IMG/VR virus record: IMGVR_UViG_3300031669_000001
Location: 248,001 to 312,000 of that record
DNA: 64,000 nt
Strand: one strand, 5' to 3'
A program made the translations under genes and the position numbers. Positions 16,101 to 63,581 of this stretch are shown here, piece after piece (positions within the stretch are counted from its first letter, which is position 1; every line of letters begins with the position of its first letter). Under the pieces are notes generated by a model. It was given only the letters and a program-made list of their open reading frames with translations. It was not told where the DNA came from and did no database searches.

Positions 16101-16485
16101 CGTCACTTCCCTTCTTAATCGCATCCTCGATTTTATCCCAGCTGGATCCGATTAACACCATGCTGAGAATGACGATCACTCCTAAGAACCAATGGTCGTA
16201 CCATACGAGAACTCCAGCGAGCACCAAGTCGGTGTAGTTGAACAGCTTTGACAACTTTGAACGTGAAGATTTAGCCTTGACTAACATCTCCTTGCCCGTG
16301 TCAGTGGTGATCGCGATGCTGCTGAAGAATAATATCCAGATAAAAAACACCATCAAGTTGTAAGCGCCTGCAACATTCTTGACAATTGCAAAGTAGACCA
16401 GCACCCACATGATAACGTTGTAGACTGTCTGTTTTAGTTCTCTCATTTGTTTTCCTTTGGAAATTGTAAACGCGTCATTCATCAA
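16093..16485 (-). CDS. Hypothetical membrane protein
   Basis: 3-4 hydrophobic segments. Confidence 0.65.
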   Translation of the reverse strand: MMNDAFTISKGKQMRELKQTVYNVIMWVLVYFAIVKNVAGAYNLMVFFIWILFFSSIAITTDTGKEMLVKAKSSRSKLSKLFNYTDLVLAGVLVWYDHWFLGVIVILSMVLIGSSWDKIEDAIKKGSDDE

Positions 16486-17701
16486 GCTCCGCGGTGGTCT
16501 GCAAAAGGTTCAATTGACGTAAGCCAAATTGTTCACGTAGGTAGTTGCGTTCGTAGAAGCCATTGTAGTCTGGCTCCTTGCCGTCCTTCTTGTTCATGAT
16601 CAGCTTGAAGAAAGGATGGTTGTAGCCTTGCGAACCGTAAAGCAACGCAAGCTCTTTCTTTGTCTTGTTACAAACAAGTTCAAAGATGTCATTGACTGTC
16701 CAGATGATCGCATCTATCTCAGCAACCACTCGAGTTTCGATGGCGTTGATCTCGGTGATATCGCAACCTTCACCAACCAGTACCGACTTTAAGTCATCCA
16801 GAGTTTCATTCAACACCATCTCAGCGATGTCACGTTCGCGCAGGAAGGTCATTGCTTTGTGACGCTCCATGTACCAAGCAGTTTTTACCTTCAACATTTC
16901 ACCGCTTTCAAACTGAACTACTACGCCTTCAACATCTGTAGTTTCTTCAATGTAGCGCTTAACGCCCTCGGGATTGTCAAACATCTTCTTGAGGTGATCG
17001 AGTTCAGTTACAACAGGGATATAAAACGATTTTGCAGTTACTTCCAACTCTGCGGTCTTAAAGTATTCACCTGTAACGTTGTGACGAATGTGCAACAAGG
17101 TCAATGAATCGTGCTTGTAACCTATGACTATCCGTGCAACTGGGGAAGTCCACTCGAAGATAGCAGTGAGATCATTCTCAACGCACCAATTGCAAAAATC
17201 GCCGTAGCGTGGATAGGCAAAGGAGGAAGAGAGGAGAAAGGAAGGAGAAGGAGTTGCAGTTTCAGCTAACATCAAGAAGCCCTTAGCTTGGTGTGCAACG
17301 TCAGACACGTAGCTCTTCTTTGACTTTAAATCAAAGTTGAGGTTACTTGGCCATAATTTGTCTGTATTCTTTACAGCGACTGTGTGGATCATTGAACCGT
17401 CGCGCTTGTCCATCACGCGAACAACCTTGGACCAGTCGATATTCTCAAAGAGCACATCTTGATTCTGATTCAGGTTGCTAAATTTGTGAAGTGGGCGGGC
17501 AATTACTTTGCCGTCTTTGAATACGATGCCGCGAGCTTCACGAGAGTACATCTCGTCGAAGGTACCATCGCAAGAGACGATGTAGGAACAAACGACAGTT
17601 CCATTATCTTGGTCCATGAAGCGAATTTCAGGCTTGTGAGCGACAGCCTGACGCATTGCCAAGTCATCAGTAAGAACTGGAAATACCAAATCGTTGCTCA
17701 T
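16475..17701 (-). CDS. rnlA: RNA ligase 1 (T4 Rnl1-like)
   Basis: EARGIVF, RPLHKFSNLN, motif I KRDGSMI, FEWTSP..RIV, EGVVVQF...LKVKTAWY. Confidence 0.9.
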   Translation of the reverse strand: MSNDLVFPVLTDDLAMRQAVAHKPEIRFMDQDNGTVVCSYIVSCDGTFDEMYSREARGIVFKDGKVIARPLHKFSNLNQNQDVLFENIDWSKVVRVMDKRDGSMIHTVAVKNTDKLWPSNLNFDLKSKKSYVSDVAHQAKGFLMLAETATPSPSFLLSSSFAYPRYGDFCNWCVENDLTAIFEWTSPVARIVIGYKHDSLTLLHIRHNVTGEYFKTAELEVTAKSFYIPVVTELDHLKKMFDNPEGVKRYIEETTDVEGVVVQFESGEMLKVKTAWYMERHKAMTFLRERDIAEMVLNETLDDLKSVLVGEGCDITEINAIETRVVAEIDAIIWTVNDIFELVCNKTKKELALLYGSQGYNHPFFKLIMNKKDGKEPDYNGFYERNYLREQFGLRQLNLLQTTAELDE

Positions 17702-17727: not shown

Positions 17728-17756
17728 ATTATATCACCAGTCCTACTGAAAGTAAA
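17728..17756 (-). promoter_or_regulatory. Early promoter
   Basis: TTTACT-N17-TATAAT. Confidence 0.85.
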
Positions 17757-18005: not shown

Positions 18006-18779
18006 TTATTTCCTCTTTTGTTTTGCTTGTATTAACCAAGCTTGATAGTTAGCAACTGTGGTTTTGTCGAGACTTGGATCAAACTTGATTCCAGTAACAG
18101 CTTCAATCGCCTCCAAGTTTACAACAAATTTTGATAGGTCGTGTTCAGGCTCGTTAGGCATCATGAATGCGATTGACTTTCCAGTCTGAGCATCGATCAT
18201 GATCTTCCACAGTGAGCTTGGAACCCAAACTTTATCCTTACCGATCGTAGGTGGATTGATGGTCTTGTAGACTGGACCTGTGATGACGTAGACACCAGCT
18301 GGATGGCTCTTCGTGTAGCCTCGAATGTAAGTTTCCATTTGCTTCCAGATAACCTCATTGTTTTTGTAATTTTGAGGCACCATGTTGGACATGAAGAACG
18401 ACTCATGAACGCAAACTTCACACGCGCTGAAGTCTTGATCTGGGGTCATGTGACCGCGATCGCATCTTCCGCCGTTACACATGGAATGCACGTAATCTTT
18501 TGGAGAAGATTGATGACTTGGATCGATGGCTGGATCTACTCTAAAGTCATTGCTTCTCTTCATCTTTCCAGTGTGATTAGCTGCGAGAAATTCAGTCGTG
18601 TAGATAGGATTTCTGCTCGTCCAAGAGTAGGCGACGGCGTATTCTTTGTGGCAGATATACTGGTCAGCGTTGATAACTGGGGCTGACTTGTAAGTTAGCT
18701 GTTTGCAGGAATCATCAATAGGATTTGCAAACGCGGTGGTTGCTGCAAGCAGCAAGAATAGAGAAAGTAGTTTCTTCAT
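18006..18779 (-). CDS. Exported DNA/RNA non-specific endonuclease (NucA/Serratia-type)
   Basis: Signal peptide MKKLLSLFLLLAATTAFA; DRGHMTP active-site motif; SFFMSNMVPQ; YVITGP. Confidence 0.9.
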   Translation of the reverse strand: MKKLLSLFLLLAATTAFANPIDDSCKQLTYKSAPVINADQYICHKEYAVAYSWTSRNPIYTTEFLAANHTGKMKRSNDFRVDPAIDPSHQSSPKDYVHSMCNGGRCDRGHMTPDQDFSACEVCVHESFFMSNMVPQNYKNNEVIWKQMETYIRGYTKSHPAGVYVITGPVYKTINPPTIGKDKVWVPSSLWKIMIDAQTGKSIAFMMPNEPEHDLSKFVVNLEAIEAVTGIKFDPSLDKTTVANYQAWLIQAKQKRK

Positions 18780-19650: not shown

Positions 19651-19956
19651 CTAGTAATCTGGCTTCCGCTTTTTGTGTGAATGACGAATGACGAATGGCT
19701 CTAAGGTGAATTCTTCTTTGAGACCAAATTCTTTGATTTGTTCATCAGTAAGTCTTCCAATGATCGGATCTTCTTCTACTTTGATCTTTGGATTTGCAGG
19801 AATACAGATTGCTTTCCTACTTCTATTAGGATAGATTCCGTATTGATGTGATCGATAAATGCAGTCCTGTTGTGTTTCGAAGCTGCTAGCGAATTCTGGC
19901 ACTAGAGTTCTACCGTATAGCACAAAGATGATCAGGACTGTGTTCATAGGAGTCAC
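19651..19956 (-). CDS. Hypothetical protein
   Basis: 101-aa ORF. Confidence 0.5.
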   Translation of the reverse strand: MTPMNTVLIIFVLYGRTLVPEFASSFETQQDCIYRSHQYGIYPNRSRKAICIPANPKIKVEEDPIIGRLTDEQIKEFGLKEEFTLEPFVIRHSHKKRKPDY

Positions 19957-20049
19957 CAGAGCTTACCACATAATTTTGTTATATGGTACTATGTCTTAGT
20001 TTTGAGAGTGACGCAGAGATGATTCTGTCGGGTTGATTTATTATTCAAA

Positions 20050-20214
20050 TCAATTACTTGGTTTAGCTGGTGAACATTTCAGATTATCTATCCAAGCAGA
20101 GCTGACTGTTGTTCCATGTAGTCTGCATTGAGTCTGTATGTCATGTTCATGTGAGTACGCACCAATGTAAAGTAGCGAGATAGCAACGGCAGTGAACAGA
20201 AAAATTTTCATCAT
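20050..20214 (-). CDS. Small exported protein (54 aa, MMKIFLFTAVAISLLYIGAYS...)
   Basis: Manual translation; GGAG RBS; signal-like N-terminus, two Cys. Confidence 0.55.
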   Translation of the reverse strand: MMKIFLFTAVAISLLYIGAYSHEHDIQTQCRLHGTTVSSAWIDNLKCSPAKPSN

Positions 20215-26749: not shown

Positions 26750-26778
26750 ATTATAACACAGTACTCGTGAACAGTACA
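26750..26778 (-). promoter_or_regulatory. Early promoter
   Basis: TGTACT-N17-TATAAT. Confidence 0.75.
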
Positions 26779-28534: not shown

Positions 28535-29251
28535 TTATATTTTTATTTTATCATCTTCCGTAAGAAATTTACATTTTTCAAAATGCCATTGGTTCATGGT
28601 ATTTTTGGATATTTCTCGTTTACAATGAGGACATTGAATTTTCAGGTGGGATGCAGCTATCATCTTTTTCATCTGTTCAGGAGATGAAGTATTTTTACGT
28701 TCTTTATTTGAAGCAATAATACTTTCACGATGATTGGTGGATATAATGCGCTTCTCTCCTTTACGATGTTTACCTTTGCCGCCGATAGACATTTTAGTGA
28801 GTGTCTCAACAGAACGATTTTGTTGAGCTAACGACATTTTGGTACGAGTTTCAACAGAAATGTTTTGTTTAGCGATCTTCATTCTTGCACGTGATTCGGC
28901 AGAATGTTTTCGTCCTGTCATTTTAGCGATCGTTTCCGCGGTATGCCCTGAACTACCACCCCAGATTCCATTTTCAGGCATTAAATTAAGCCATAAATCT
29001 GATTTCACAATGTCTTGATGTTCACTAAACATTAGCGCAAACTTTGTGAGCTCTTCCTGCTCAGTGAACAGACAATACCAAAGAGTCTCTACATACTCGC
29101 GACCATGTTTCTTAATATGACGTTTCCAACGTTTCCCTGATCCAAGGTATTGGAATTTAGAAAGATCACCCGTAGTCTTACCGAAATAACACTTTCCTGT
29201 GATAGAATGCAGCTTGATATAAAGATAGGTAGGTCTAAAGTTAATCGTTAT
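28535..29251 (-). mobile_element. Free-standing GIY-YIG-like homing endonuclease with NUMOD3-type repeats; non-AUG start
   Basis: The frame is open 73 codons upstream of the annotated ATG: (I)TINFRPTYLYIKLHSITGKCYFGKT...YLGSGKRWKRHIKKHG. C-terminus has HTAETIAKM/HSAESRARM repeats and CPHC. Confidence 0.75.
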
Positions 29252-29783
29252 TGATCTCCAAAATCAGATTAAAGCCCTCACTACGAGACGGAGCGACATA
29301 CGAATTGAACATGTTCTTCAGCACAAAAGGAGGGATTACTTTCCCCGTCAAGGCTGCACGTGCATCAAGACGAGCTTGCAACACCTTGTCATCGCAGGTG
29401 AAGTTCAGACAAATCTTGTTGTACGAGTCTGGTACTACGGCAAGTTTCGACGTGCGAGCCTTGCGACCCATGTTTGTTTGATCGTGGAAGATGTTCTTGC
29501 GAGCTAGGATAGCTTTAGCGATCTGCTCTTCCATCTCACGCTTAACCTTCTTCTGATTCACTTTGTGAAAAGCTTCGGAGTACGTCAACCCCATCTTCGC
29601 AGCTTCGATTTCGACTAGGTCGTCCGTCGATGCCAAGATGAATGGATTACACGCACCGTTAGATTCTTCTTGAAGTTTCTTCAAGAATGTAGATTTGCCT
29701 ACACCAGGAGCGCCGACCATCATGACGTATGACGGTGTTTGCCATTCCTGAAGTAAACGCTGGATTGCTGTAGATGGTTTCAT
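29241..29783 (-). CDS. P-loop kinase (polynucleotide kinase / AAA_33 type)
   Basis: MMVGAPGVGKST, STDD, DQTN...R, R...TGK.IP...EGF. Confidence 0.85.
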   Translation of the reverse strand: MKPSTAIQRLLQEWQTPSYVMMVGAPGVGKSTFLKKLQEESNGACNPFILASTDDLVEIEAAKMGLTYSEAFHKVNQKKVKREMEEQIAKAILARKNIFHDQTNMGRKARTSKLAVVPDSYNKICLNFTCDDKVLQARLDARAALTGKVIPPFVLKNMFNSYVAPSRSEGFNLILEINND

Positions 29784-29789
29784 ACAGGC

Positions 29790-29818
29790 ATTATATCAAA
29801 GTGTAACGTGAAAGTAAA
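29790..29818 (-). promoter_or_regulatory. Early promoter
   Basis: TTTACT-N17-TATAAT. Confidence 0.85.
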
Positions 29819-32293: not shown

Positions 32294-32323
32294 GTGAACC
32301 TCCAATCAATTTATGATGGAGTA

Positions 32324-32351
32324 ATTATATCATAGTGCAGCAGAAAGTAAA
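32324..32351 (-). promoter_or_regulatory. Early promoter
   Basis: TTTACT-N16-TATAAT. Confidence 0.75.
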
Positions 32352-32564
32352 TCAATTTTTAAGCTTTTTCAGCTTATTTTCACGAGCGATACGCTGCTTC
32401 TCACGCTGAACTAAGATTTCTGTCCATTCCTCTTCTGTCACGCTTGACTTCAGAATTACATCCCATGCATCTTCTGTAAGAATAGGAGTCATGATGTAAC
32501 CGCACCACCTCATCCATGGAAGGAGAGTGACGTAGGACTGTGATTCAAAGTGCCAGACTAGCAT
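32352..32564 (-). CDS. Hypothetical protein
   Basis: 70-aa ORF; start uncertain. Confidence 0.45.
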   Translation of the reverse strand: MLVWHFESQSYVTLLPWMRWCGYIMTPILTEDAWDVILKSSVTEEEWTEILVQREKQRIARENKLKKLKN

Positions 32565-32932
32565 TTGACGAATCCATAACGAATCAACATGATAGGACTC
32601 GATCCGTCAGACCACTTACAATCAACCTTGATAGCAAGCTGATTGAATCTTTTTGCTCCGCGATTAGCATCGAAGTACATTTCCTCCTCTACCCAATCGC
32701 TAACCCATGTCAGATTGTTATCGTGAATGATCTGATCTGACCTTGACAGGCTTAGCTTGAGATGTCCACACCAAACTTCAACGAGATTATAACCATCATC
32801 TCGTATCGTAACGTAGAATCTGTTCAGTCTAATCTTGACAACTTCGTAAAGTTGTCCTACTCGCAGTCTAGGTGGTTTATCGAAGTAAGGCATCGATGTC
32901 AGCGTAACTGGAGAACCGATTTCCAAGTTCAT
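32558..32932 (-). CDS. Hypothetical protein
   Basis: 124-aa ORF coupled to the CoaE-CoaD stop. Confidence 0.55.
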   Translation of the reverse strand: MNLEIGSPVTLTSMPYFDKPPRLRVGQLYEVVKIRLNRFYVTIRDDGYNLVEVWCGHLKLSLSRSDQIIHDNNLTWVSDWVEEEMYFDANRGAKRFNQLAIKVDCKWSDGSSPIMLIRYGFVKC

Positions 32933-34020
32933 TTGTGAACGTCCTTGAGCTTTTCAAGAACACACTTTGAAACGTAAGGAGCTGCAACTCTCTCCCACTC
33001 TCGAAGCGCTAAGGCCCCCTTGATCAGAGAAGAACTAATCTCTATCAGTTCACGAGGCGTCATCAAGAAGATCGTTTCAATCTCAGGCGCTATCTTCTTC
33101 TGAAGAAGGTTCAATTGATTTTCATACTCAAGGTCTGTAGCGCCTCGAAGTCCCCTGAAGATAAACTTTGCGCCTGAGTTTGCTGCGTAACTAACGATCA
33201 GTTCGTCGGATGGAATGAAGTCGATTGTGACTCTCGCCATTTGTTCAGGTGACAGGACTTCTTGTAACGTGCACTTTACTAGCTGCGATCTCGTCTCATC
33301 ATCGAAAAGGTATTTCTTAGATGGGTTTGATGCTACAGCGACGATGATATAGTCCACTATATCAAGCGCTCTTTGAATGACCCAGGTGTGTCCCAGTGTA
33401 ATCGGATCGAATGATCCAGACACTATACCGATCTTCTTTCCCTTCAGCTGCTTCTTACGCATGAGGTCAAGAGCTTTCTTTATCTCCAATTGAAGATAAT
33501 TTTCTTCATGTATCGCTCTTATTCCATTGTAGATTATCGCATCGCTAACCGCAAATCTATGTTCGTCTGTAGTTTGAGATTCCATGATAGCCAAAATTTG
33601 ATCTTGTGATCGTCCATCTCTATCACTCACTCGCTGAATCTGTAAGCTAGGGGGAGACACCACTGAGATTACAAAGTCAAACCTTGAAATCAACGTTGGA
33701 GCGTTCTCAACTAATAACGGGAACTCTAGGATAAAGTCATTCCTTTGCATAAGAGTTTCAATCTTCCTAGAGATTATGTCATGAAAGATGAATTCAAGCT
33801 CTTTCATCGCTTGCTTATCTGCAAAAACAATATCACGTATCTTTAATCGATCGCTTGTTCCAAATTCCAGCCTTAAAGCGCTGCATATTTCTGGATTATC
33901 ATACGCATCCCTTACAAATTCATCTATGCTAAAGACGTGATGATTTGGAAGAGCGTCAGCTAACAACTGACATACTGTTGATTTGCCTGAACCTATCCCA
34001 CCTGTTACTACGATCTTCAT
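32929..34020 (-). CDS. coaE-coaD: Fusion of dephospho-CoA kinase (CoaE, N-terminal) and phosphopantetheine adenylyltransferase (CoaD, C-terminal)
   Basis: MKIVVTGGIGSGKSTV...RDIVFAD...PLLVE...QIQRVSDRDG...SQ (CoaE); GSFDPITLGH, NPSKKYLF, FRGLRGATDLEYE, ISSSLIK (CoaD). Confidence 0.9.
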   Translation of the reverse strand: MKIVVTGGIGSGKSTVCQLLADALPNHHVFSIDEFVRDAYDNPEICSALRLEFGTSDRLKIRDIVFADKQAMKELEFIFHDIISRKIETLMQRNDFILEFPLLVENAPTLISRFDFVISVVSPPSLQIQRVSDRDGRSQDQILAIMESQTTDEHRFAVSDAIIYNGIRAIHEENYLQLEIKKALDLMRKKQLKGKKIGIVSGSFDPITLGHTWVIQRALDIVDYIIVAVASNPSKKYLFDDETRSQLVKCTLQEVLSPEQMARVTIDFIPSDELIVSYAANSGAKFIFRGLRGATDLEYENQLNLLQKKIAPEIETIFLMTPRELIEISSSLIKGALALREWERVAAPYVSKCVLEKLKDVHK

Positions 34021-36693: not shown

Positions 36694-38178
36694 TTACGCG
36701 TAGGTGGTATCTGCCCGTGCCCAAGACTGTACTTCATCGAAGTCTTGGAAGCGTTTTTGCGCACCATCTTTTGACCACAATCTCCAGCCAGGACCATCAA
36801 CGAAGAAGGAAGCTGGGTTGGCAGTGCAATCACGAACCTCCAACTCACCGCTTTCCAGTTCGAAAGGACGAACCAAACCACGCAGAGACTTCTTGCCCAG
36901 GTCGGTGATTGGTTCTTTAACCAAAGACCTCCAACCGTTTGCATCCATCATCGCGATTGCCTTCATGCTGAAGCTGAAGTCATCGCGAGCACCTTCGTGG
37001 GTAACACCAGCACCCATACCCAAGGTCAGGCTGTCCATGCTGTAACCTTTGCTAGTGAATCCTTCCAGCACTGGCTCGATGGTGTTGATGCGGATTCCAT
37101 CACCTTGGATGACGGCGGTGCAAGGTGCCAAGACCTTGTAACCGGCTGCATTCTTGTGGACACCGAAGGTATCTTCGATGTCCTTTGCGACCCGCGCCGG
37201 CTCAACAGTTGCATCGCCAGAGTCAGGACGCATGACCATCACACCACCACTGTTCTCGATCTCTTCGCGGAAGGTTTCACCCATGTACTCACGAACGAAG
37301 CGGCGAGCATTGTAGGTGTCGATAACGACGCTCAACAGTGGGATGCCTATGCCGCGCTTAGTACGAGCAACAACGGCGTGCAGGCGTTTCACTGCCATCT
37401 TCGCGGCGCCGAAGTCATCACGCTTGTCAGCGTCGCTGTGCGCGCACATTACGCTGTGCTCAGTAGCTTCAACGCTTGAGGTGTATGGCTTGTTGGAGAA
37501 AACGGTGTTCTTGTTGAACAGAGCTTTGATGTAACTGTTTGCGCGAGTGCAATCGCTACCATCGAACATCGCTGCGTGAGCGATACCCGCGATGACAGCA
37601 GCTTCATCTGGACTGTCTGCACCACGATCGCCGAAGTTGTGCAGCTTGTAATTCAGCATTCCCATGTTGGCGCCGGTCTTCTGCATGTACTTGGCGATGA
37701 TGATGCGAGCTGCGCGGCAGGTACTTGCTACGGTAGACATCTTCCAGACGGTGCATTGAACGACAGTCTCGACATAAGTAGGCAACCAGGCAAAGAGATC
37801 GTGAGTATTGACGATACCCAGCACTGGAGTTTGAGGCTTGACGATACGACCTTCTTCAACTGCCCATACTTCCAGCGGCAGCTTGCCGTCCAAATAGTCG
37901 ACCATGTACTGCCAGTCGGCGCGGTTGAATTCGTATCCTTGTTGGGTGATTTCGATATCAGCTTCATCGACCATCCACTGTTCGATGCGCACTGAAGCCA
38001 AAAAGTTTGCTACGTAGGTTTGACCCATCGCGACGATCTTATCTGCGTACTTGCTGGGTTTACGTGGAACGATAGCTGCGTAAGAACGCAGAGTTCCGTC
38101 GGGCAATTCTTGCCAGTGACCAGCTTTGTAGCTGTCGCAGGCCAGAATAAAGTTGAAGCGCTTTATCATTTGTAACAT
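36694..38178 (-). CDS. nadV: Nicotinamide phosphoribosyltransferase
   Basis: DSYKAGH, LHNFGDRG, EATEHSVM, SVVIDTYN, VMRPDSGD, VIQGDG, GMGAG, KEPITDLGKKS. Confidence 0.95.
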   Translation of the reverse strand: MLQMIKRFNFILACDSYKAGHWQELPDGTLRSYAAIVPRKPSKYADKIVAMGQTYVANFLASVRIEQWMVDEADIEITQQGYEFNRADWQYMVDYLDGKLPLEVWAVEEGRIVKPQTPVLGIVNTHDLFAWLPTYVETVVQCTVWKMSTVASTCRAARIIIAKYMQKTGANMGMLNYKLHNFGDRGADSPDEAAVIAGIAHAAMFDGSDCTRANSYIKALFNKNTVFSNKPYTSSVEATEHSVMCAHSDADKRDDFGAAKMAVKRLHAVVARTKRGIGIPLLSVVIDTYNARRFVREYMGETFREEIENSGGVMVMRPDSGDATVEPARVAKDIEDTFGVHKNAAGYKVLAPCTAVIQGDGIRINTIEPVLEGFTSKGYSMDSLTLGMGAGVTHEGARDDFSFSMKAIAMMDANGWRSLVKEPITDLGKKSLRGLVRPFELESGELEVRDCTANPASFFVDGPGWRLWSKDGAQKRFQDFDEVQSWARADTTYA

Positions 38179-38853: not shown

Positions 38854-38870
38854 TTGAAGTATTATAACAC

Positions 38871-39113
38871 CTATTCTAATGGAAGTACATACCTTTTTTG
38901 GAACTGGAATCCTTCTCCGCGAAGGTAACATCCAAGATATGGACCTCTTTGACCTGGATCACGAGGGAAACCTTCTTCGAACAGCTTAACTTCTCCATAT
39001 CCAAGAGAGTTCAGCCAAGTTTGAAGTTGATCTTTAGTCAAGATATAGTCGTCAAGGTCTTGCCACTCTGTAACGGGAGTATCACAAAACACTCGACGAC
39101 TCTGGTACGTCAT
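38871..39113 (-). CDS. Hypothetical protein
   Basis: 80-aa ORF coupled to the ATP-grasp stop. Confidence 0.55.
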   Translation of the reverse strand: MTYQSRRVFCDTPVTEWQDLDDYILTKDQLQTWLNSLGYGEVKLFEEGFPRDPGQRGPYLGCYLRGEGFQFQKRYVLPLE

Positions 39114-39922
39114 CTCTCCATCCCTTCCAACGCCATCACTATCTCCATCACGTTTCCTGCGTAGAAGCCAGATGCATTGATGGTGTTGATCTCTACTATC
39201 TTCATGCCGTCAGGAGTCTCACAGACGTCAAGTACGTAAGCTCTGTGCGGTTGCCATGCACTCGTTGTCATGCTCAAGGTGATATCACCAAAGCGGATAA
39301 CTTGGGCTGCAAACCAACGCACCGCGTCATCAACGACAGGTGAATAGATCACGCGATTGCCTCTTTTGTAAAGAGAGGCTGTAACAATTTTCTTATCGAC
39401 TATCCAAAAACGGTACTCAGCAAAGATCTTCTTTGGAGTGCAGACTTGGACGAGAGTGCTAGGCATTAAGCTGTTACCGTAGTCCAGTTCCAACACGCAA
39501 ACGTTACGCTGCCAATCCTGAAATTCTTCCCACTCAAAGACCCGGCCAGCGAAGACCTTCGAGTCCTCGATAGGACGAATGAACCGCGGCTCATCATCAG
39601 TCCAATGCACGTCTTTGAACTGAACAACTTTAGCGTCAGCGTTCAGCATCATGTCACCCCAATGCTGCAATTGAATCTCAAAGTTGATAGGCTCGAGATC
39701 ATACACTCCTGGGTTCCAGTTGTTTGCCTTTGCTGCATGACGCATCGAGTATGATCCAAAGCAGATAACTTTGTCCTGCTTGGGTTCAGCGGGCGGTACC
39801 AACTCACCGATGAAGGGTACTACCTTGTGAATAGAGTATGGAATCTTGAAGCGATCCAGCGTTCCAACCAAGTTATCCCACTCGGCTTCATTGAACAAAT
39901 TTGTTTGTAAAATCCAGTGCAT
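39110..39922 (-). CDS. ATP-grasp domain protein (DUF4343/R2K-like)
   Basis: FIRP...K.F.G.V; EYRFWIV; YVLDV...KIVEIN..NASGFY. Confidence 0.8.
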   Translation of the reverse strand: MHWILQTNLFNEAEWDNLVGTLDRFKIPYSIHKVVPFIGELVPPAEPKQDKVICFGSYSMRHAAKANNWNPGVYDLEPINFEIQLQHWGDMMLNADAKVVQFKDVHWTDDEPRFIRPIEDSKVFAGRVFEWEEFQDWQRNVCVLELDYGNSLMPSTLVQVCTPKKIFAEYRFWIVDKKIVTASLYKRGNRVIYSPVVDDAVRWFAAQVIRFGDITLSMTTSAWQPHRAYVLDVCETPDGMKIVEINTINASGFYAGNVMEIVMALEGMER

Positions 39923-40255: not shown

Positions 40256-41413
40256 TCATAATTTCCCCAGCATGTACTCGATGATGAAGTAGTGATCTTC
40301 GAAGAACATCTCAGGGCTCTTCATCACTTCATCCAATGGAACCCACCAGGCCTTCTCAGCATCATCGTCACCCTTAACCTTCGGCAGCGATATCTTGCCG
40401 TCTACTACGAAGTCAGGCAGCTTAAACAAAAATCCCTTGGTGACAGTGCGACCGCGTAAGGAACGTTCAGGATAATCGAAGTCTTCTTTGAAGATCATCG
40501 AGCTGCGCAGAATCGGTTCAGGAACCTTGATGCGAGTCTCTTCACGCAGTTCACGGATTGCAGCTTCAAACAATCGTTCTTTGGGGTTCAAGAAGCCTCC
40601 AGGCAGCGCCCACAAACCTTTTCCAGGACGGCTACGACGTTTAACCAGCAGCACGTGACCAGTTTGGATGACGATTGAATCAACCGTCTGGAAGATTGGT
40701 TCGTAGCGAAGACCGGGATCATTTTGACCATAAGTTCCAGGATCACGTGGTATGTTCGGTTTACGATACTCGATGTTGAAGAGATGCTCTTCACGCAGGT
40801 TGTCGTAGAATGGAGTCTCTTCGAAAGCGCGAAGCTCATTAATCGTTTCAGCTGGCAAGAATGCGTTCAATAACAATTCTGCGTGGTTAGCGGTGATCTC
40901 GTTGCCATCGAATGAACGGCCAAAGTAGATTTCACGGACTGCGGTGGCGGTCAAGAAGCGACTGACTTCCATATTTTCATCGACCATGTCAGCGATGAAG
41001 TTAGGAAAGTACTTCAAGTAGAACGTTGAGGAATCACGATCAGCACCAGTGATTCTGATCTCAATGTCTTTGGGATTGAGTTTGACTTGCTCAGCGCTAT
41101 CAACGAACTCGTTGATCACCTTGTTAACGTTTGCTATCCAAAGTTGATCATTGTAGGGGAAGTCTCGAATGCCACGCACTGATACCGGTGCATTTTTAGC
41201 GTGTGGAGTCCAAGGACGAGATGCCCACTTATCAATGACGCTTGCACGTTCTTCAAACGTCCAGGGATTTTTGGGATTTCTTGCTTGATTGATGGAACCG
41301 ATGAGGACCAGCACAGCGTCCGAGCGCTCACGTGCTCGCTTCAGAACTTCTGCATGTCCATTGTGGAATGGGGAAAATCGACCGATGTACACGGTCAGTA
41401 CAAACTTAGCCAT
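40256..41413 (-). CDS. natV: Bifunctional NMN adenylyltransferase / ADP-ribose pyrophosphatase (NadM-Nudix, NatV)
   Basis: YIGRFSPFHNGH, KNPWTFEER, D.PYNDQLW; Nudix box GLWALPGGF...E.L.EAAIRELREET; DDAEKAWW; FFEDH. Confidence 0.95.
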   Translation of the reverse strand: MAKFVLTVYIGRFSPFHNGHAEVLKRARERSDAVLVLIGSINQARNPKNPWTFEERASVIDKWASRPWTPHAKNAPVSVRGIRDFPYNDQLWIANVNKVINEFVDSAEQVKLNPKDIEIRITGADRDSSTFYLKYFPNFIADMVDENMEVSRFLTATAVREIYFGRSFDGNEITANHAELLLNAFLPAETINELRAFEETPFYDNLREEHLFNIEYRKPNIPRDPGTYGQNDPGLRYEPIFQTVDSIVIQTGHVLLVKRRSRPGKGLWALPGGFLNPKERLFEAAIRELREETRIKVPEPILRSSMIFKEDFDYPERSLRGRTVTKGFLFKLPDFVVDGKISLPKVKGDDDAEKAWWVPLDEVMKSPEMFFEDHYFIIEYMLGKL

Positions 41414-58281: not shown

Positions 58282-58551
58282 TTAAATCAGATGGTGTAAT
58301 TGTGCTTTTGCTATCATGTCAGAGATAACTTTTTCACCTTTGAATACTTTCTTTAAAAGCTCGTCAGCTTCGTGATGTTCACGAGTAGCGATCAAATATG
58401 CATGATAGACAGCTAAAGTGTCAAAGCAAGATGGTCTTAGGATCTGTGCGGTCTTAGTATTGACTAATGCTTTTTCTTCTAGGTTAATCTTGATGTGACA
58501 CATTCCAATTATTCTCATATTTGCTGACGAAATGCAATTGTTGAATTTCAT
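58282..58551 (-). CDS. Hypothetical protein (start MKFNNC)
   Basis: 89-aa ORF. Confidence 0.45.
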   Translation of the reverse strand: MKFNNCISSANMRIIGMCHIKINLEEKALVNTKTAQILRPSCFDTLAVYHAYLIATREHHEADELLKKVFKGEKVISDMIAKAQLHHLI

Positions 58552-58599
58552 TTCGTCAGCACGCTGGCGAACCAACGTGCTAGTTGTTAGATTTCTTTA

Positions 58600-58936
58600 A
58601 TAAGGTAGAAAGCTTTCACCCTCTATTCTAAACCTCAGGCAACAATTAAGCTGCCAGAGCCAGAGCTCCGTTTGCGTCGTTTGCATTTACATGCTTGTCA
58701 GATTTACGGTCTGTACTCACCGAGTTGTAAAATTAAGGTACGTCCCTACTCAATCGAAACCAGGTACACCCCCATTAGGGGGCACTAGTTACTTTGATCC
58801 GACCTGGGTTCAGGTGTTAATGCGAATCAGGGAGCTCTAGTGCTCGGTGGAGGTGGGGAGAATCGAACTCCCGTCTTGCGCAGCTTTCGCTTTTTCCTTT
58901 CAGCAGTTTCCTGCCATACAACCATCTTTACTACTT
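58600..58936 (-). ncRNA. ssrA: Circularly permuted (two-piece) tmRNA gene; outer ends approximate
   Basis: The T-arm GGGAG-TTCGATT-CTCCC and acceptor strand CACCTCC-A-CC (58875-58846) come BEFORE the 5' strand GGGGGTG-TACCTGGTTTCGA (from 58773). G3:U wobble present; pk1-like CGGT/ACCG + CAG/CTG; tag ORF 58684-58646 ANDANGALALAA*. Confidence 0.93.
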
Positions 58937-58942
58937 GAATCC

Positions 58943-58971
58943 ATTATAACAAATTGATACATGAAAGTACA
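58943..58971 (-). promoter_or_regulatory. Promoter of the tmRNA gene
   Basis: TGTACT-N17-TATAAT. Confidence 0.8.
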
Positions 58972-59195
58972 TTATTTATTTGCGGGCTTTTGATTCCAAT
59001 AGATAGTTGCGAGCGTGAGAAGAACACCCACACCCATTCCTAGGAAAAAAGCTGTGGAGTAGCACAGCACATACTCTAAAATGATTTCCACGTTAAGCTC
59101 CAGCGATCAGAATAGCAAATATTACGAATGCAATGAAGAAATGACCTGTCACCAGGAATAGGAGCGCTAGGACTGCTAGGATCTGGACAGTATTT

Positions 59196-59750
59196 CTACT
59201 CATTTGTTTCTCCATAAAGTGTGTTAGGTAAACCTTTGCGTTGAAGCTTTGCACGAGAACGAGCAATCAACGTTTCTGCTGTCGTTGGGTCCTTAACATC
59301 TCCAATAGTAATTGGTTTTACAGTCAAAACTTTCTTGACTTTCCTGTCCATGGATCCAACGATTCTTTGTTGCTTGTGTTTCAGCAGAGTTACCTCTCTG
59401 CATCGTCTAACTACGCTCTTGAGCTCGCCTATCAGAACGTTAGACATCAAGTTAATAGAAAGAGCGTCAGGCATCTCACAGCCGCCGCTACCAATGTACA
59501 TCTCTTCGCGAAGCAGATTATCGGCGGTGTCTTCGATGTCGAGGCGCAGCTTACTCGATATGAAGTTGAGAGTTTTTACGCTCAACATTCCAGCCTCAGC
59601 TGCGCGGACAGCGTCGGCCATGATTGCTTGGACGCTATGAATCTTCACTGAAAGCTTTCTCGTGTACTTTGGATCATTGAGAAAGTTCAATCTGTCTGCT
59701 AGGTAGATCGCAGCTGGTGTCTTACCAAAGGTGTGCTTATCTAGATTCAT
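59196..59750 (-). CDS. Hypothetical protein
   Basis: 184-aa ORF in a coupled operon. Confidence 0.6.
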   Translation of the reverse strand: MNLDKHTFGKTPAAIYLADRLNFLNDPKYTRKLSVKIHSVQAIMADAVRAAEAGMLSVKTLNFISSKLRLDIEDTADNLLREEMYIGSGGCEMPDALSINLMSNVLIGELKSVVRRCREVTLLKHKQQRIVGSMDRKVKKVLTVKPITIGDVKDPTTAETLIARSRAKLQRKGLPNTLYGETNE

Positions 59751-60813: not shown

Positions 60814-61144
60814 CTTCTTTTTCTCCGGGAGTTAAAAAGTTGTTCCAGCAAAGTTTCATTTCTTCGTTAAACTCTAACGTTTCGACGTTGAATGGGATTA
60901 TCTCTAGAGTCTCCAAATCAAGTCTATCAAACCTAATACCCATCAACTCAGCAGCGTAAACAGGAATAGGTCCATCAAAGATTCCATTATGTTCAGGAAC
61001 GAAGTCGATTTGGCACTTATCACACCAAAGATGCTTCGCGTATTCTGACCACTGTGTGTTCTCATTACCACACTTACAAGGTGCTATGTCATACTTTCTT
61101 GGTGGCTGAACGTAGCACCAAGTTCGCTTAATCAGCTCTGCCAT
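60794..61144 (-). CDS. Zn-finger-like hypothetical protein
   Basis: CKC...WSEY..HLWCDKC. Confidence 0.6.
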   Translation of the reverse strand: MAELIKRTWCYVQPPRKYDIAPCKCGNENTQWSEYAKHLWCDKCQIDFVPEHNGIFDGPIPVYAAELMGIRFDRLDLETLEIIPFNVETLEFNEEMKLCWNNFLTPGEKEDDEDCA

Positions 61145-61581
61145 GTGGCGATGACGTCTTTCGCGATGCGCGCAGCGAGTCCGCCGTCATAACGACCCTC
61201 GTATTTGAACTTTAGAATCTTGAGCATCTCACCCATTGGCTTATTGGCAACGTCGAAGCCATTCACCTTGACGATGTCGATCAGAATTTCACGAATCTTT
61301 TCTTCGGTGAGTTGTGCAGGCAGGAAAGAATTGATCAGCTCTTTTTCAGTCGTAGCATCAACGAAGCGCTCATCACCTTCTGCAAGTAGAGGAAGAATTT
61401 GATCGAGGTTCTTGATGAACTTCTTTATCACGGCAATTGTTTCTGCATCGGTCGTTTCGCGACCTTCGTTCTTACCAACCATAGTTGCTTCAGAAAGAAG
61501 TGTGATCAGAGAAGCTGCCTTCTTGGATTCGCGATTTTTGCGCGCTGTGATAGACGCGGCTTTAATGTCATCGAGAATCAT
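61132..61581 (-). CDS. GatB/YqeY-domain protein
   Basis: IKAASITARK...LLSEA...VIKKFIK...FLPAQLTEE...MGEMLK...GRYDG. Confidence 0.85.
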   Translation of the reverse strand: MILDDIKAASITARKNRESKKAASLITLLSEATMVGKNEGRETTDAETIAVIKKFIKNLDQILPLLAEGDERFVDATTEKELINSFLPAQLTEEKIREILIDIVKVNGFDVANKPMGEMLKILKFKYEGRYDGGLAARIAKDVIATWQS

Positions 61582-61879: not shown

Positions 61880-62272
61880 CTATTTAAATACCGAGAGTGA
61901 AGCCTTTGCTTTTAGACCTTCATCGTTAGCGCTCTTGATGATCTTGTCGTTCTTCAAGACTACCACGTTAACTAGCTTGTACATCCCCTTCGACGCACCA
62001 CTTTGATCGTGAACGCCATGAAATTCTTTACCGATATCCTTTACGTAGCTGTCATAGGCATTACCTGAGCTAGAGATGAAAGCGAAGCGATTCTTTTCAT
62101 CAGGCTTCTTGCAGACTAGAATCGTATCTTCGCTATCTTTCCACTCTGAAGCTGCGGTGATAATATCTACCGTACGACGACCGTAAAGTGCCATGGTGGC
62201 AGGAAGAATTACCCAATCACGAACTCCATAACGACGCTCGTTGAGAGTTAAAAGCTCTAGAAGTAAGTTCAT
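61880..62272 (-). CDS. Hypothetical protein with MNLLLELLTLNE N-terminus
   Basis: Coupled to the DUF3175-like gene; L-x-E tag. Confidence 0.6.
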   Translation of the reverse strand: MNLLLELLTLNERRYGVRDWVILPATMALYGRRTVDIITAASEWKDSEDTILVCKKPDEKNRFAFISSSGNAYDSYVKDIGKEFHGVHDQSGASKGMYKLVNVVVLKNDKIIKSANDEGLKAKASLSVFK

Positions 62273-62763
62273 TTTGAAGCTTCCAGCGTTTCTAAGGCGC
62301 TCTTGAGAACAGCCTTACGATCAGCTGAAAGATTTTTACCTGCACGGTTGATGTAGAAGTTTAATGCAGATACAGCACCCTTCTTATCAGCGTGAGATGA
62401 CTTTAACCATTTAACGATAGCCGATGCAGAACCGTCAGCAAACAGTCCTTCTGGAGGATGCTTTTTGGTTTTAACGTCGCCAGACCACTTCAGCTCCATC
62501 AATTGTTCTAATGAAAGATCATCTTCCATGGATTCGTGAAGGCGCTTTTTAGCAGCTTCCAAAGTTGCCTTGCGATCAGCTGAGAGCTTCTTGCCGGCGC
62601 GGTTGATGTAGAAGTTGAGAGCGCCCATTGCGCTCTTAAGATCTTTGTGGGACGACTTCAACCAAGATGCGATCTCAGCAGCAGATCCAGTTGCAAAAAG
62701 ATCTTCAGGTGGGTGCTTCTTTGTCTTGACGTCGCCAGACCATTTTAATTCGGATAGTAACAT
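62269..62763 (-). CDS. Tandem DUF3175-like domain protein
   Basis: Two ~75-aa copies of ELKWSGDVKTKKHPPE.LFA.GSA...AL NFYINRAGK.LSADRKA.LE. Confidence 0.7.
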   Translation of the reverse strand: MLLSELKWSGDVKTKKHPPEDLFATGSAAEIASWLKSSHKDLKSAMGALNFYINRAGKKLSADRKATLEAAKKRLHESMEDDLSLEQLMELKWSGDVKTKKHPPEGLFADGSASAIVKWLKSSHADKKGAVSALNFYINRAGKNLSADRKAVLKSALETLEASK

Positions 62764-62818: not shown

Positions 62819-63211
62819 TTACAGCAACTTAAGGTGCCCAGTTATCGCGTTAATCTTATCATTCTCTGCAGGACCAACAGAAATGCATGTATTGGTTGGA
62901 ACTCCACTGAATTCTGTTAACCCACTATCAGTGATCAGCGAGCAGGTTATTCCAGCAGCTTTAGCCTTCTCTAATAGTTCAAGAAGCTCGGCTTCACTGT
63001 TAACACCGCAACAGATCTTCTTGAACACTCCTTTCATGAGCCACTCATCCATCTCAGGCGTAAGTGGGATCATGAGGTAACGTGCTCCTCCATTGGCAAC
63101 AAAAACACTTCCACTATCAACAACGGGTTTCATAGAAGCGTGAGAACCTTGGGCTACCATCTTACCCTTGCGCATGTTGAGGTCGGTCCTCATTACAATG
63201 ACCTGTTTCAT
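62819..63211 (-). CDS. pth2: Peptidyl-tRNA hydrolase, Pth2 type
   Basis: MKQVIVMRTDLNMRKGKMVAQGSHA, KKIC..V.SE.EL, ITDSGLTE, TC..VGP, ITGHLKLL. Confidence 0.95.
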   Translation of the reverse strand: MKQVIVMRTDLNMRKGKMVAQGSHASMKPVVDSGSVFVANGGARYLMIPLTPEMDEWLMKGVFKKICCGVNSEAELLELLEKAKAAGITCSLITDSGLTEFSGVPTNTCISVGPAENDKINAITGHLKLL

Positions 63212-63542: not shown

Positions 63543-63581
63543 TAGGGTGTTCATTATATCATGAACACCCTACAGAGTAAA
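63543..63581 (-). promoter_or_regulatory. Early promoter whose -10 lies in a 12-bp inverted repeat (also terminator-like)
   Basis: TTTACT-N17-TATAAT; arms tagggtgttcat (63543-63554) / atgaacacccta (63561-63572); minus-strand TTTCTTTT follows. Confidence 0.75.

What the first reader, a model, noticed from the sequence alone, without database searches (positions are those of the whole stretch)
58600..58971. Phage-encoded circularly permuted (two-piece) tmRNA
Seen, minus strand, after a TGTACT-N17-TATAAT promoter. First comes the acceptor piece, ending ...GACGGGAG-TTCGATT-CTCCC-CACCTCC-A-CC (58875-58846). Next is a ~72-nt intervening segment closed by GCACTAG/CTAGTGC. Then the coding piece starts GGGGGTG at 58773, which pairs with CACCTCC including the alanyl G3:U wobble. 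It carries a pk1-like pseudoknot and the tag ANDANGALALAA* (58684-58646). Inter-piece pairing GGTTGTA/TACAACT is present. Established: two-piece tmRNAs occur in alphaproteobacteria, some marine cyanobacteria and a betaproteobacterial lineage including Dechloromonas; the phage tmRNAs I know of are one-piece; terminal ALAA is a ClpXP degron. Inference: the phage acquired the permuted form from such a host and uses it to rescue ribosomes stalled by anti-phage RNases. It also constrains the host, consistent with the glmU fragment.
Basis: partly seen in the sequence, partly recalled or inferred. Interest (0 to 1): 0.9.

Follow-up and report, generated by a model that had tools for sequence, protein, structure and literature searches.

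The report
Two-piece tmRNA gene in a jumbo phage
A 345-kb uncultivated phage carries a complete, circularly permuted (two-piece) tmRNA gene under one of its own promoters, most likely to rescue stalled ribosomes during infection; the gene is real, but phages with such genes are already documented, so this is a new member of a known kind.

Summary
ARAGORN calls a permuted tmRNA at 58937-58555 (minus strand) with tag ANDANGALALAA*. Rfam tmRNA_permuted (RF04321) scores 84.5 bits against a threshold of 47 (E 1e-14). The window is part of IMG/VR contig UViG_3300031669_000001 (345,069 bp), a jumbo phage.

New evidence for function:
- The promoter belongs to a phage promoter family (TKTACT-N14-TGnTATAAT): 9 sites in the window against 0.05 expected.
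- The only relative found (L170/L171) has the same tag peptide. It differs at 6 tag bases, all synonymous third positions (P about 3e-4).
- That relative also shows compensatory changes in the T stem, P2a and an inserted GAAA hairpin.
- A Pth2 peptidyl-tRNA hydrolase and a YqeY-like gene lie 2-4 kb upstream.

- Phage two-piece tmRNAs are already catalogued (Buchholz 2022: 53 permuted forms in phage genomes).
- 89 of the first 120 IMG/VR pattern hits were permuted.
- Cultured Xanthomonas and Achromobacter phages carry unannotated permuted tmRNAs, and Xanthomonadales-related MAGs here have standard tmRNAs, so the gene does not constrain the host to a two-piece lineage.
- The RNA is beta-like but divergent (RF01850: 63 bits, below the threshold of 84).

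Verdict: real and probably functional; a new member of a known kind; modest interest.

The parts
59045..59068 (-). Intrinsic terminator (6-bp G+C-rich hairpin followed by T6) that ends the upstream transcription unit, so the tmRNA gene is its own unit.
58943..58971 (-). Promoter: TGTACT (58971-58966), TG (58951-58950), TATAAT (58948-58943). It belongs to the phage's own promoter family, TKTACT-N14-TGnTATAAT.
   Evidence: 9 sites with at most 1 mismatch against 0.05 expected, all on the minus strand
58846..58936 (-). Acceptor piece, transcribed first. The 5' end is inferred from the -10 element. The 3' end is ...CACCTCC-A-CC. The next encoded base is G, so the terminal A of CCA is not encoded.
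58917..58923 (-). P2a 5' strand, GGTTGTA, which pairs with 58729-58723 in the coding piece.
   Evidence: the family covaries at this helix; only this strand is complementary to ACAACT
58902..58915 (-). Inserted hairpin GGCAG-GAAA-CTGCT just after P2a. It is absent from the main IMG/VR family and from the Rfam consensus, but a hairpin in the same place occurs in L171, L007, Xoo-sp13 and JWDelta.
58876..58881 (-). Proximal P2 5' strand, GCGCAA, which pairs with TTGAGT 58753-58748 (5 of 6 pairs).
58856..58872 (-). T arm: GGGAG, loop TTCGATT, CTCCC.
58774..58845 (-). Intervening segment of 72 nt, removed on processing. It folds into a long irregular hairpin closed by GCACTAG/CTAGTGC.
58556..58773 (-). 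Coding piece. It starts with GGGGGTG, the 5' strand of the acceptor stem (G3.U at 58771/58851), followed by the D-loop-like TGGTTTCGA at 58762-58754.
58723..58729 (-). P2a 3' strand, TACAACT.
58697..58722 (-). PK1 region. Stem 1 is CGGT/ACCG. The candidate stem 2 is GT(A)CAG/CTGAC.
   Evidence: stem 1 matches the model hairpin; stem 2 is inferred only
58646..58684 (-). Tag reading frame: resume codon GCA, 12 codons (ANDANGALALAA), stop TAA. It is preceded by GTAAAT, as in the family.
58638..58655 (-). Helix 5, GGCAGC/GTTGCC, with the stop codon in its loop.
58558..58581 (-). 3'-terminal 10-bp hairpin with a TTCG loop. It matches the last hairpin of the beta_tmRNA model.
58523..58560 (-). 12-bp stem-loop without a T tract just after the gene. 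It may be a 3'-end or terminator structure. L171 has an analogous long hairpin.
62819..63211 (-). Context: Pth2-type peptidyl-tRNA hydrolase, on the same strand about 4 kb upstream.
   Evidence: PF01981, E 4.5e-31
61132..61581 (-). Context: YqeY/GatB-C-like protein, on the same strand about 2 kb upstream.
   Evidence: PF09424, E 5.8e-16; PHROG 1460

Best explanation
This is a functional, phage-encoded two-piece tmRNA (ssrA) of the betaproteobacterial structural type, though a divergent one.

Shown:
- The gene order is acceptor piece, 72-nt spacer, coding piece.
- It has an alanine-type acceptor stem with G3.U, a T arm, inter-piece P2 pairing, and a tag frame ending in ALAA with its stop codon in the loop of helix 5.
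- Its promoter belongs to the phage's own promoter family.
- The tag peptide and the helices are conserved through synonymous and compensatory changes in a second, otherwise unrelated phage contig.

Inferred:
- Host RNA polymerase transcribes the gene along with the phage's nucleotide-metabolism and replication genes, which use the same promoter type.
- RNase P cuts 5' of G58773, and tRNA 3'-processing enzymes trim the acceptor piece.
- Because the DNA reads ACC-G, the host CCA-adding enzyme supplies the last A.
- The two pieces stay base-paired. AlaRS charges the RNA and SmpB delivers it to ribosomes stalled on broken mRNAs. No smpB was found in this window, so SmpB is probably the host's.
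- Translation switches to the tag, the ribosome is released, and the tagged protein goes to ClpXP-type proteases.
- The benefit to the phage is a larger pool of working ribosomes while mRNAs are being cut, by phage or host nucleases or by defence RNases. The nearby Pth2 peptidyl-tRNA hydrolase serves the same goal.
For: - Detection: ARAGORN reports a permuted tmRNA with this tag. RF04321 scores 84.5 bits against a gathering score of 47, E 9.8e-15, over the full model. The best subtype model is beta_tmRNA, E 1.4e-18 within the 901-nt region searched.
- Phage setting: the window lies in a 345,069-bp IMG/VR contig. It carries tail fibres, topoisomerase II subunits, Rnl1, a dNMP kinase and other phage genes.
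- Promoter: the motif TKTACT-N14-TGnTATAAT occurs 9 times against 0.05 expected, always on the minus strand. TGnTATAAT occurs 15 times against 1.7 expected.
- Relative: L170/L171 was retrieved both by a tag pattern and by a pattern that does not involve the tag. The tag peptide is identical with 6 of 36 bases different, all synonymous third positions, P about 2.7e-4. The rest of the RNA is only about 56% identical.
- Compensatory changes against L171: T stem GGGAG/CTCCC versus GCGGG/CCCGC; hairpin GGCAG/CTGCT versus GTCC/GGAC, each closing a GAAA loop; first pair of P2a G.U versus C-G.
- Family covariation in P2a: pair 3 is T-A in 35 sequences and C-G in 32. The proximal P2 helix also covaries.
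- Context: Pth2 and a YqeY-like gene lie upstream.
- Precedent: PMC9004378 and PMC7162821.
Against: - There are no expression, processing, charging or tagging data.
- The beta_tmRNA score of 63 bits is below that family's gathering score of 84.
- PK1 stem 2 is not supported by comparison.
- The proximal P2 helix has one G-A mismatch.
- The CCA end is not fully encoded, whereas 69 of 72 family members encode ACCA.
- No smpB was found among the roughly 70 window ORFs scanned, and the other 281 kb of the contig was not available.
- The host is unknown, so compatibility with host SmpB and AlaRS is assumed.
- The comparative evidence rests on a single relative.
Confidence: 0.8

Rival explanations
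1. The RNA hijacks or inhibits host trans-translation rather than adding to it. It would outcompete the host tmRNA for SmpB and stalled ribosomes, either blocking the host system or replacing the host tag with a phage-chosen one that changes the fate of tagged proteins.
For: - A phage tRNA-like-domain-only tmRNA (mycobacteriophage DS6A type) inhibits endogenous tmRNA in E. coli (PMC11915505 and PMC4131195).
- The 12-residue tag, with Gly at position 6 and no aromatic residue, is unlike the ANDxx[FY]ALAA tags of most family members.
- The tag peptide is conserved between two unrelated phage contigs.
Against: - The gene has a complete tag frame with a canonical ALAA end, helix 5 and a stop codon.
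- An RNA that only titrates SmpB would need none of these, and their conservation argues that the tag is translated.
- Nothing shows that the tag differs from the host's, because the host is unknown.
Confidence: 0.08
2. It is a recently captured host ssrA gene, or a decaying copy with no function for the phage.
For: - The beta_tmRNA score is below threshold.
- The terminal A of CCA is not encoded.
- The spacer is unusually long and there is an extra hairpin.
- Capture of ssrA through imprecise prophage excision is discussed in PMC9004378.
Against: - The promoter is the phage's own type.
- The ACC-G end and the GAAA hairpin are shared with L171, so they are lineage traits and not damage.
- Changes in the tag are all synonymous, and stem changes are compensatory.
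- No close bacterial counterpart turned up among 185,579 species genomes searched with the exact 27-mer.
- Local GC content equals that of the phage.
Confidence: 0.05
3. It is an integration-site element. Phages and genomic islands that integrate into ssrA carry a copy of its 3' part, so this could be an attP-associated fragment.
For: ssrA is a frequent integration target (PMC4383910 and PMC9004378). Some IMG/VR hits with standard tmRNAs may be junctions of that kind.
Against: - The whole gene is present, with both pieces, a promoter and the tag, not just a 3' fragment.
- No integrase was found among the ORFs scanned around it.
- The genome is a 345-kb phage with a T4-like replication gene set.
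Confidence: 0.02
4. It acts as a sensor or timer. [quoted passage not shown]
For: The idea is stated for huge-phage tmRNAs in PMC7162821, citing Janssen and Hayes.
Against: No regulatory target, riboswitch or linked lysis gene was found next to the gene. Rfam at E up to 10 found no riboswitch in 58300-59200, unlike the glutamine riboswitch of phage Melnitz.
Confidence: 0.05

Closest known systems
Betaproteobacterial two-piece tmRNA (Rfam RF01850 beta_tmRNA; Sharkady and Williams 2004, as cited in PMC9004378 and PMC11915505)
   Same: - The gene order is acceptor piece then coding piece.
- It shares the motifs ATGGTTGTA ... GAC-T arm-CACCTCCACC ... GGGGGTG-TA-CTGGTTTCGA ... ACAAC-CGG, an AND-type tag ending in LAA, and a terminal hairpin.
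- RF01850 is the best-scoring subtype model.
- The nearest relative, L171, passes that family's threshold at 87.8 bits.
   Different: - The window scores 63 bits, below the threshold of 84.
- It has an extra GAAA hairpin after P2a, a 72-nt spacer, ACC-G instead of ACCA, a T stem of GGGAG/CTCCC instead of the consensus GGGGG/CCCCC, and a 12-residue tag.
- It lies in a 44% GC phage, not a bacterial chromosome.
Phage-encoded two-piece tmRNAs already published: OM43 phage Melnitz, Pelagibacter phages HTVC008M and Mosig, Caulobacter phiCbK-like phages, Synechococcus phages S-CAM1, S-CAM3, S-CRM01, S-SSM7 and S-CBWM1 (PMC9004378, Table S1)
   Same: These are complete permuted ssrA genes in large lytic phages. 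The authors propose that they maintain the hijacked translation machinery.
   Different: - By the authors' phylogeny those are alpha-type or cyano-type; this one is beta-like.
- Melnitz and Mosig have a glutamine riboswitch, which is absent here.
- There is no nucleotide similarity to any INPHARED phage beyond the T arm and acceptor stem.
Unannotated permuted tmRNAs in cultured phages: Xanthomonas jumbo phage Xoo-sp13 (MN047793, about 39030-39373) and Achromobacter phage JWDelta (KF787094, about 19736-20120)
   Same: - Both match RF04321 (65.7 and 95.8 bits).
- Both have the same T arm and a small hairpin inserted after P2a.
- Xoo-sp13 is also a jumbo phage, and its topoisomerase II is 43% identical to the window's.
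   Different: Core identity is only about 48%. The tags, spacers and 3' domains all differ.
IMG/VR contigs L170/L171 (UViG_3300037424_000713 and UViG_3300037483_000443)
   Same: - Identical tag peptide.
- ACC-G end followed by AGCA.
- GGGGGTGTACCTGG at the start of the coding piece.
- GAAA hairpin after P2a.
- Promoter of the type TTTACT ... TGaTATAAT.
- A long 3' hairpin without a T tract.
   Different: - The spacer is about 19 nt, against 72 nt here.
- The D-loop-like motif is GGATTTGA.
- The 3' domain differs.
- The gene lies next to a 25-tRNA array.
- The flanks share no protein homology with the window.
One-piece phage tmRNAs (mycobacteriophage Bxz1 group, Bacillus phage G; PMC4131195)
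   Same: They are phage-borne ssrA genes in large phages and presumably have the same role.
   Different: They have the standard, unpermuted gene order.

Membership tests
Permuted (two-piece) tmRNA, Rfam RF04321 | The 3' (acceptor) part of the tRNA-like domain is encoded upstream of the 5' part and the tag. | tested here: met
   the acceptor 3' strand is at 58855-58849, upstream of the 5' strand at 58773-58767 and the tag at 58684-58646.
Permuted (two-piece) tmRNA, Rfam RF04321 | The covariance-model score reaches the curated threshold. | tested here: met
   84.5 bits against 47, model positions 1-213 of 213.
Permuted (two-piece) tmRNA, Rfam RF04321 | An alanine-type acceptor stem with G3.U70 and discriminator A, plus a T arm. 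| tested here: met
   GGGGGTG pairs with CACCTCC, G58771.T58851, A58848. The T arm is 58872-58856.
Permuted (two-piece) tmRNA, Rfam RF04321 | Inter-piece P2 pairing holds the two RNAs together. | tested here: met
   family covariation (T-A 35, C-G 32 at pair 3). In the window the pairs are 58923-58917 with 58729-58723 and 58881-58876 with 58753-58748. Compensatory change against L171.
Permuted (two-piece) tmRNA, Rfam RF04321 | A tag reading frame with an Ala resume codon, a hydrophobic C-terminus and an in-frame stop. | tested here: met
   GCA ... GCT TAA, ANDANGALALAA*. All six differences from L171 are synonymous.
Permuted (two-piece) tmRNA, Rfam RF04321 | Pseudoknot PK1 upstream of the resume codon. 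| tested here: inconclusive
   stem 1 is present and aligned. Stem 2 is only a 5-bp candidate with a bulge, and L171 gives no covariation support.
Permuted (two-piece) tmRNA, Rfam RF04321 | The 3'-terminal CCA is encoded (usual, but not required). | tested here: not met
   the DNA reads ACC-G, whereas 69 of 72 unique family members read ACCA. The trait is shared with L171, so the CCA-adding enzyme is needed.
Permuted (two-piece) tmRNA, Rfam RF04321 | The RNA is processed into two pieces, alanylated, bound by SmpB and able to tag proteins. | not testable with these tools
   This needs RNA and protein experiments.
Betaproteobacterial subtype, Rfam RF01850 | The covariance-model score reaches the curated threshold. 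| tested here: not met
   63.0 bits against 84, although it is the best subtype and covers the full model. The relative L171 scores 87.8, and many IMG/VR phage copies score 84-162.
Betaproteobacterial subtype, Rfam RF01850 | It resides in, or derives from, the bacterial lineage that has two-piece tmRNA (Dechloromonas and relatives). | tested here: inconclusive
   the exact 27-mer of the T arm and acceptor strand is found in 46 species genomes, mostly in standard tmRNAs. Only 6 are permuted (Herminiimonas, Noviherbaspirillum and unclassified MAGs), and none is close.

The most novel reading that the evidence does not exclude
Beta-type permuted tmRNAs may form a largely phage-borne lineage. It would circulate among phages of Proteobacteria whatever form the host's own tmRNA takes, including hosts with the standard one-piece form. 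Within that lineage, small clades such as this one plus L171 would keep a specific tag peptide under selection. If so, the two-piece form is favoured in phage genomes, and phages could be the vehicle that spread, or even seeded, the permuted form in bacteria.
Probability: 0.25. Interest if true: 0.55.

Novelty: new member of a known kind. Interest (0 to 1): 0.3.

Why it matters
It adds a well-supported example of a jumbo phage carrying its own ribosome-rescue RNA. The gene is wired into the phage's own promoter system and sits near a peptidyl-tRNA hydrolase, which supports the view that large phages invest in keeping host ribosomes working.

Two practical lessons follow:
- A permuted tmRNA in a phage should not be used to predict that the host belongs to a two-piece-tmRNA lineage.
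- Several cultured phages (Xoo-sp13, JWDelta) and many IMG/VR contigs carry permuted tmRNA genes that are not annotated.

The conserved tag ANDANGALALAA could become a host marker if a bacterium with that tag is found.

Tried and rejected
- Nucleotide searches of INPHARED phages with the locus, 24 kb of the window and the tmRNA alone found nothing beyond T-arm/acceptor matches of about 30 nt.
- The neighbouring 184-aa protein retrieved only the source contig from IMG/VR.
- The pattern GGGGGTGTACCTGGTTTCGA retrieved only the source contig.
- A looser tag pattern retrieved the same three loci.
- The single metagenome scan returned only the source scaffold, Ga0307375_10000004.
- The single genome scan, with the exact 27-mer, gave 46 hits. 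Most were standard tmRNAs of Patescibacteria and other phyla, and none was a close bacterial relative. In hindsight the tag pattern might have been more informative about the host.
- The CM and MAFFT alignments place CTGCTGA opposite the family's P2a strand. I rejected that placement because it does not pair with ACAACT, whereas GGTTGTA does.
- The minimum-free-energy cofold pairs GGTTGT with a second ACAAC near the 3' end. I rejected this in favour of the pairing that is homologous across the family.
- Global identity did not single out L171 (56%). Its relationship rests on shared derived features.
- No glmU-like motif or Pfam hit was found.
- No SmpB and no CCA-adding enzyme were found among the ORFs scanned. 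PHROG 23333, named 'polymerase', turned out to be PARP-like.
- Flanking ORFs of L171 share no context with the window.
- My first promoter pattern had the wrong spacing and matched nothing.
- The tag string does not occur in the searchable literature.
Full report
**1. The observation**

- Promoter: TGTACT (58971-58966), 17 nt, then TATAAT (58948-58943). A TG at 58951-58950 makes it an extended -10 element.
- Acceptor piece: it ends with T stem GGGAG, T loop TTCGATT, T stem CTCCC, acceptor 3' strand CACCTCC, discriminator A, and CC (58872-58846).
- Spacer: 72 nt (58845-58774), closed by GCACTAG/CTAGTGC.
- Coding piece: it begins with GGGGGTG at 58773. This gives a 7-bp acceptor stem with the G3.U wobble that alanyl-tRNA synthetase recognises (established knowledge).
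- Tag frame: 58684-58646.

ARAGORN finds one RNA gene in the 64 kb, a permuted tmRNA at 58555-58937 with tag ANDANGALALAA*. Rfam finds one family at its gathering score. That is tmRNA_permuted RF04321, at 84.5 bits against 47, E 9.8e-15, covering the full model.

**2. What the window is**

The window is a phage.
- It encodes two collagen-like tail fibres, both topoisomerase II subunits, a T4 Rnl1-type RNA ligase and a dNMP kinase.
- It also encodes thymidylate synthases, NAMPT with an NMNAT-Nudix protein, and a GH108 lysozyme.
- It is identical to part of IMG/VR contig UViG_3300031669_000001 (scaffold Ga0307375_10000004), which is 345,069 bp. The window corresponds to about 248-312 kb of that contig. 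This is therefore a jumbo phage.
- No cultured phage resembles it at the nucleotide level.
- Its topoisomerase is at most 48% identical to those of Xanthomonas, Ralstonia, Stenotrophomonas and Pseudomonas large phages.
- Local GC at the tmRNA (43%) equals that of the rest of the window.

**3. Anatomy**

The best subtype model is beta_tmRNA RF01850. It matches from end to end (58957-58556), but at 63 bits it is below its threshold of 84.

I compared the gene with 72 unique permuted tmRNAs collected from IMG/VR and genome loci.
- The P2a helix covaries. Pair 3 is T-A in 35 sequences and C-G in 32.
- In the window, only GGTTGTA (58923-58917) is complementary to the coding-piece strand TACAACT (58729-58723).
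- The CM and MAFFT alignments mis-place this strand. The cause is a 14-nt hairpin, GGCAG-GAAA-CTGCT (58915-58902), inserted right after P2a.
- A hairpin in the same position occurs in L171, in L007 (a 281-kb contig), in Xanthomonas phage Xoo-sp13 and in Achromobacter phage JWDelta.
- The proximal P2 helix (GCGCAA with TTGAGT) keeps 5 of 6 pairs, through changes on both sides relative to the family's GTTCTG/CAGGGC.
- Helix 5 (GGCAGC/GTTGCC) holds the stop codon in its loop.
- A 10-bp hairpin with a TTCG loop ends the model match.
- A 12-bp hairpin without a T tract follows.
- PK1 stem 1 is clear. Stem 2 is only a candidate.
- The DNA reads ACC-G after the discriminator, whereas 69 of 72 family members encode ACCA. 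The last A must therefore be added by the CCA-adding enzyme. Some T4 tRNAs also lack an encoded CCA (established knowledge).

**4. Evidence that the gene is used**

(a) The promoter is one of a phage promoter family.
- TGnTATAAT occurs 15 times in the window against 1.7 expected. Fourteen of these are on the minus strand, and many lie in gaps upstream of ORFs.
- The fuller motif TKTACT-N14-TGnTATAAT occurs 9 times (at most 1 mismatch) against 0.05 expected, always on the minus strand.
- The same type of promoter precedes the RNA ligase, a topoisomerase subunit, a kinase, and the Pth2 and YqeY operons. The tmRNA is therefore part of the phage's transcription programme.
- A good intrinsic terminator lies just upstream.

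(b) One relative exists in IMG/VR, L170/L171: two contigs of 19.8 and 135.7 kb from the same phage.
- It was found by a pattern built on the tag and independently by a pattern that does not involve the tag.
- Its RNA is only about 56% identical to the window's outside the universally conserved core.
- The 12-residue tag is nevertheless identical. The 6 differences in 36 nt are all third-position and synonymous, P about 2.7e-4 for random substitutions.
- The T stem, the GAAA hairpin stem and the first P2a pair differ by changes on both sides.
- It shares the ACC-G end and a similar promoter.
- It passes the beta_tmRNA threshold at 87.8 bits.
- This is the pattern expected for an RNA whose helices and translated tag are both under selection.

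(c) A Pth2 peptidyl-tRNA hydrolase (62819-63211, E 4.5e-31) and a YqeY/GatB-C-like protein (61132-61581) lie on the same strand 2-4 kb upstream. These genes give the neighbourhood a translation-rescue character.

**5. How it most likely works**

The mechanism is set out in the best explanation, and apart from the anatomy its steps are inferred.
- Host RNA polymerase transcribes the gene from the phage promoter.
- RNase P and tRNA 3'-end enzymes release two pieces that stay paired through the acceptor stem and P2.
- The terminal A of CCA is added, and the RNA is alanylated.
- SmpB delivers it to ribosomes stalled on truncated mRNAs.
- The tag is translated, the ribosome is released, and the tagged protein is degraded through its ALAA end.

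No smpB was found among the window ORFs scanned, so SmpB is probably the host's. Huge phages are already known to carry tmRNA and sometimes SmpB (PMC7162821).

**6. Comparison with what is known**

- Buchholz et al. 2022 (PMC9004378) described the two-piece tmRNA of OM43 phage Melnitz and surveyed 18,146 phage genomes. They found 402 genomes with tmRNA and 133 unique forms, of which ARAGORN called 53 permuted.
- Their Table S1 lists phiCbK-like, Synechococcus, Pelagibacter, Stenotrophomonas, Bordetella and other phages.
- My first IMG/VR scan hit its limit at 120 loci. Of these, 89 carry permuted tmRNAs and 11 carry standard ones.
- Many of the permuted ones pass the beta_tmRNA threshold, at 84-162 bits.
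- Their loci have a median GC of 38%, and several lie on contigs of 100-280 kb.

Beta-type permuted tmRNAs are therefore common in uncultivated phages.

**7. The host claim**

- Rfam finds unannotated permuted tmRNAs in Xanthomonas jumbo phage Xoo-sp13 (65.7 bits) and Achromobacter phage JWDelta (95.8 bits).
- Lysobacter and Stenotrophomonas MAGs, which belong to the Xanthomonadales, have standard tmRNAs. Bordetella-group tmRNAs are also standard, from my own knowledge.
- The exact 27-mer of the T arm and acceptor strand occurs in 46 of 185,579 species genomes, mostly in standard tmRNAs. Only six are permuted, and none is close.
- A permuted tmRNA in a phage therefore does not place the host in a two-piece lineage.

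**8. Verdict**

The finding is real and accurately described, and the gene is very probably functional. It is a new, divergent member of a known kind: phage-encoded two-piece tmRNA of beta-like structure.

Its particular features are the inserted GAAA hairpin, the long spacer, the non-encoded terminal A, the 12-residue tag shared with one other phage, the phage-family promoter and the nearby Pth2 gene. Interest is modest.

The most novel reading still open is that these RNAs form a phage-borne lineage independent of the host's tmRNA form.

Noticed in passing
window, 15 sites including 17728-17756, 26750-26778, 29790-29818, 38861-38889, 58943-58971, 63553-63581 (minus strand): A phage promoter family with the consensus TtTACTTT, about 12 nt, ctgTGaTATAAT. 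TGnTATAAT occurs 15 times against 1.7 expected, and the full motif 9 times against 0.05 expected. Nearly all sites are on the minus strand, and many lie in gaps upstream of ORFs. None was seen upstream of the plus-strand tail-fibre block.
   Followed up: partly
window 62819-63211 (-), 62269-62763 (-), 61132-61581 (-): A Pth2-type peptidyl-tRNA hydrolase, a DUF3175 protein and a YqeY/GatB-C-like protein lie in a row upstream of the tmRNA. This may be a translation-rescue module.
   Followed up: partly
window 36694-38178 (-), 40256-41413 (-), 14579-15922 (-), 13613-14077 (-): A NAMPT gene and an NMNAT-Nudix fusion form an NAD salvage pair of the kind reported to counter NAD-depleting defences. 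There is also a PARP-like protein (WGR, PARP regulatory and catalytic domains) and a separate Nudix protein.
   Followed up: no
window 16475-17701 (-), 29241-29783 (-), 18006-18779 (-): A T4 Rnl1-type RNA ligase, an AAA_33 P-loop kinase that may be polynucleotide-kinase-like, and a non-specific endonuclease. The ligase and kinase could form a tRNA-repair set.
   Followed up: no
window 1476-2117 (-), 3342-4355 (-): TerD-like and TerC/DUF475 membrane proteins in a phage.
   Followed up: no
window 32929-34020 (-): A fusion of a dephospho-CoA kinase domain and a cytidylyltransferase-like domain. No GlmU-like hit was found anywhere I scanned.
   Followed up: partly
window 59038-58973 (-): A 21-codon hydrophobic ORF lies between the upstream terminator and the tmRNA promoter. 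A second, weaker promoter-like site (TTGGAA-17-AATAAT, 58999-58971) overlaps it.
   Followed up: no
L170 1105-4936 (-): The only relative of this tmRNA sits next to an array of 25 tRNA genes. L170 1054-1101 matches window 32311-32358 (86% over 49 nt), which contains one of the phage-type promoters.
   Followed up: partly
L167 1480-1823 (MN047793 about 39030-39373); L168 1173-1557 (KF787094 about 19736-20120): Xanthomonas phage Xoo-sp13 and Achromobacter phage JWDelta carry permuted tmRNA genes that their GenBank records do not annotate. Xanthomonas phage XacN1 shares part of the Xoo-sp13 locus.
   Followed up: partly
L132 4739-5127, L160 2428-2834, L134 6357-6765: Noviherbaspirillum genomes and a proteobacterial MAG carry permuted tmRNAs for which ARAGORN predicts odd tags of 28-30 residues starting with VN. 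These may be second copies on mobile elements.
   Followed up: no
loci L001-L120: The IMG/VR loci with permuted tmRNAs are AT-rich (median GC 38%). Most encode ANDxx[FY]ALAA tags and share a conserved 3' domain (GGGTTTCGGTAGGTTTCCTCGTAACAGAATAACCTACC). This is a large phage family of beta-type tmRNAs.
   Followed up: partly
window 58282-58575 (-): A 97-codon TTG-start ORF overlaps the 3' end of the tmRNA. It has no family match and is probably not a gene.
   Followed up: partly
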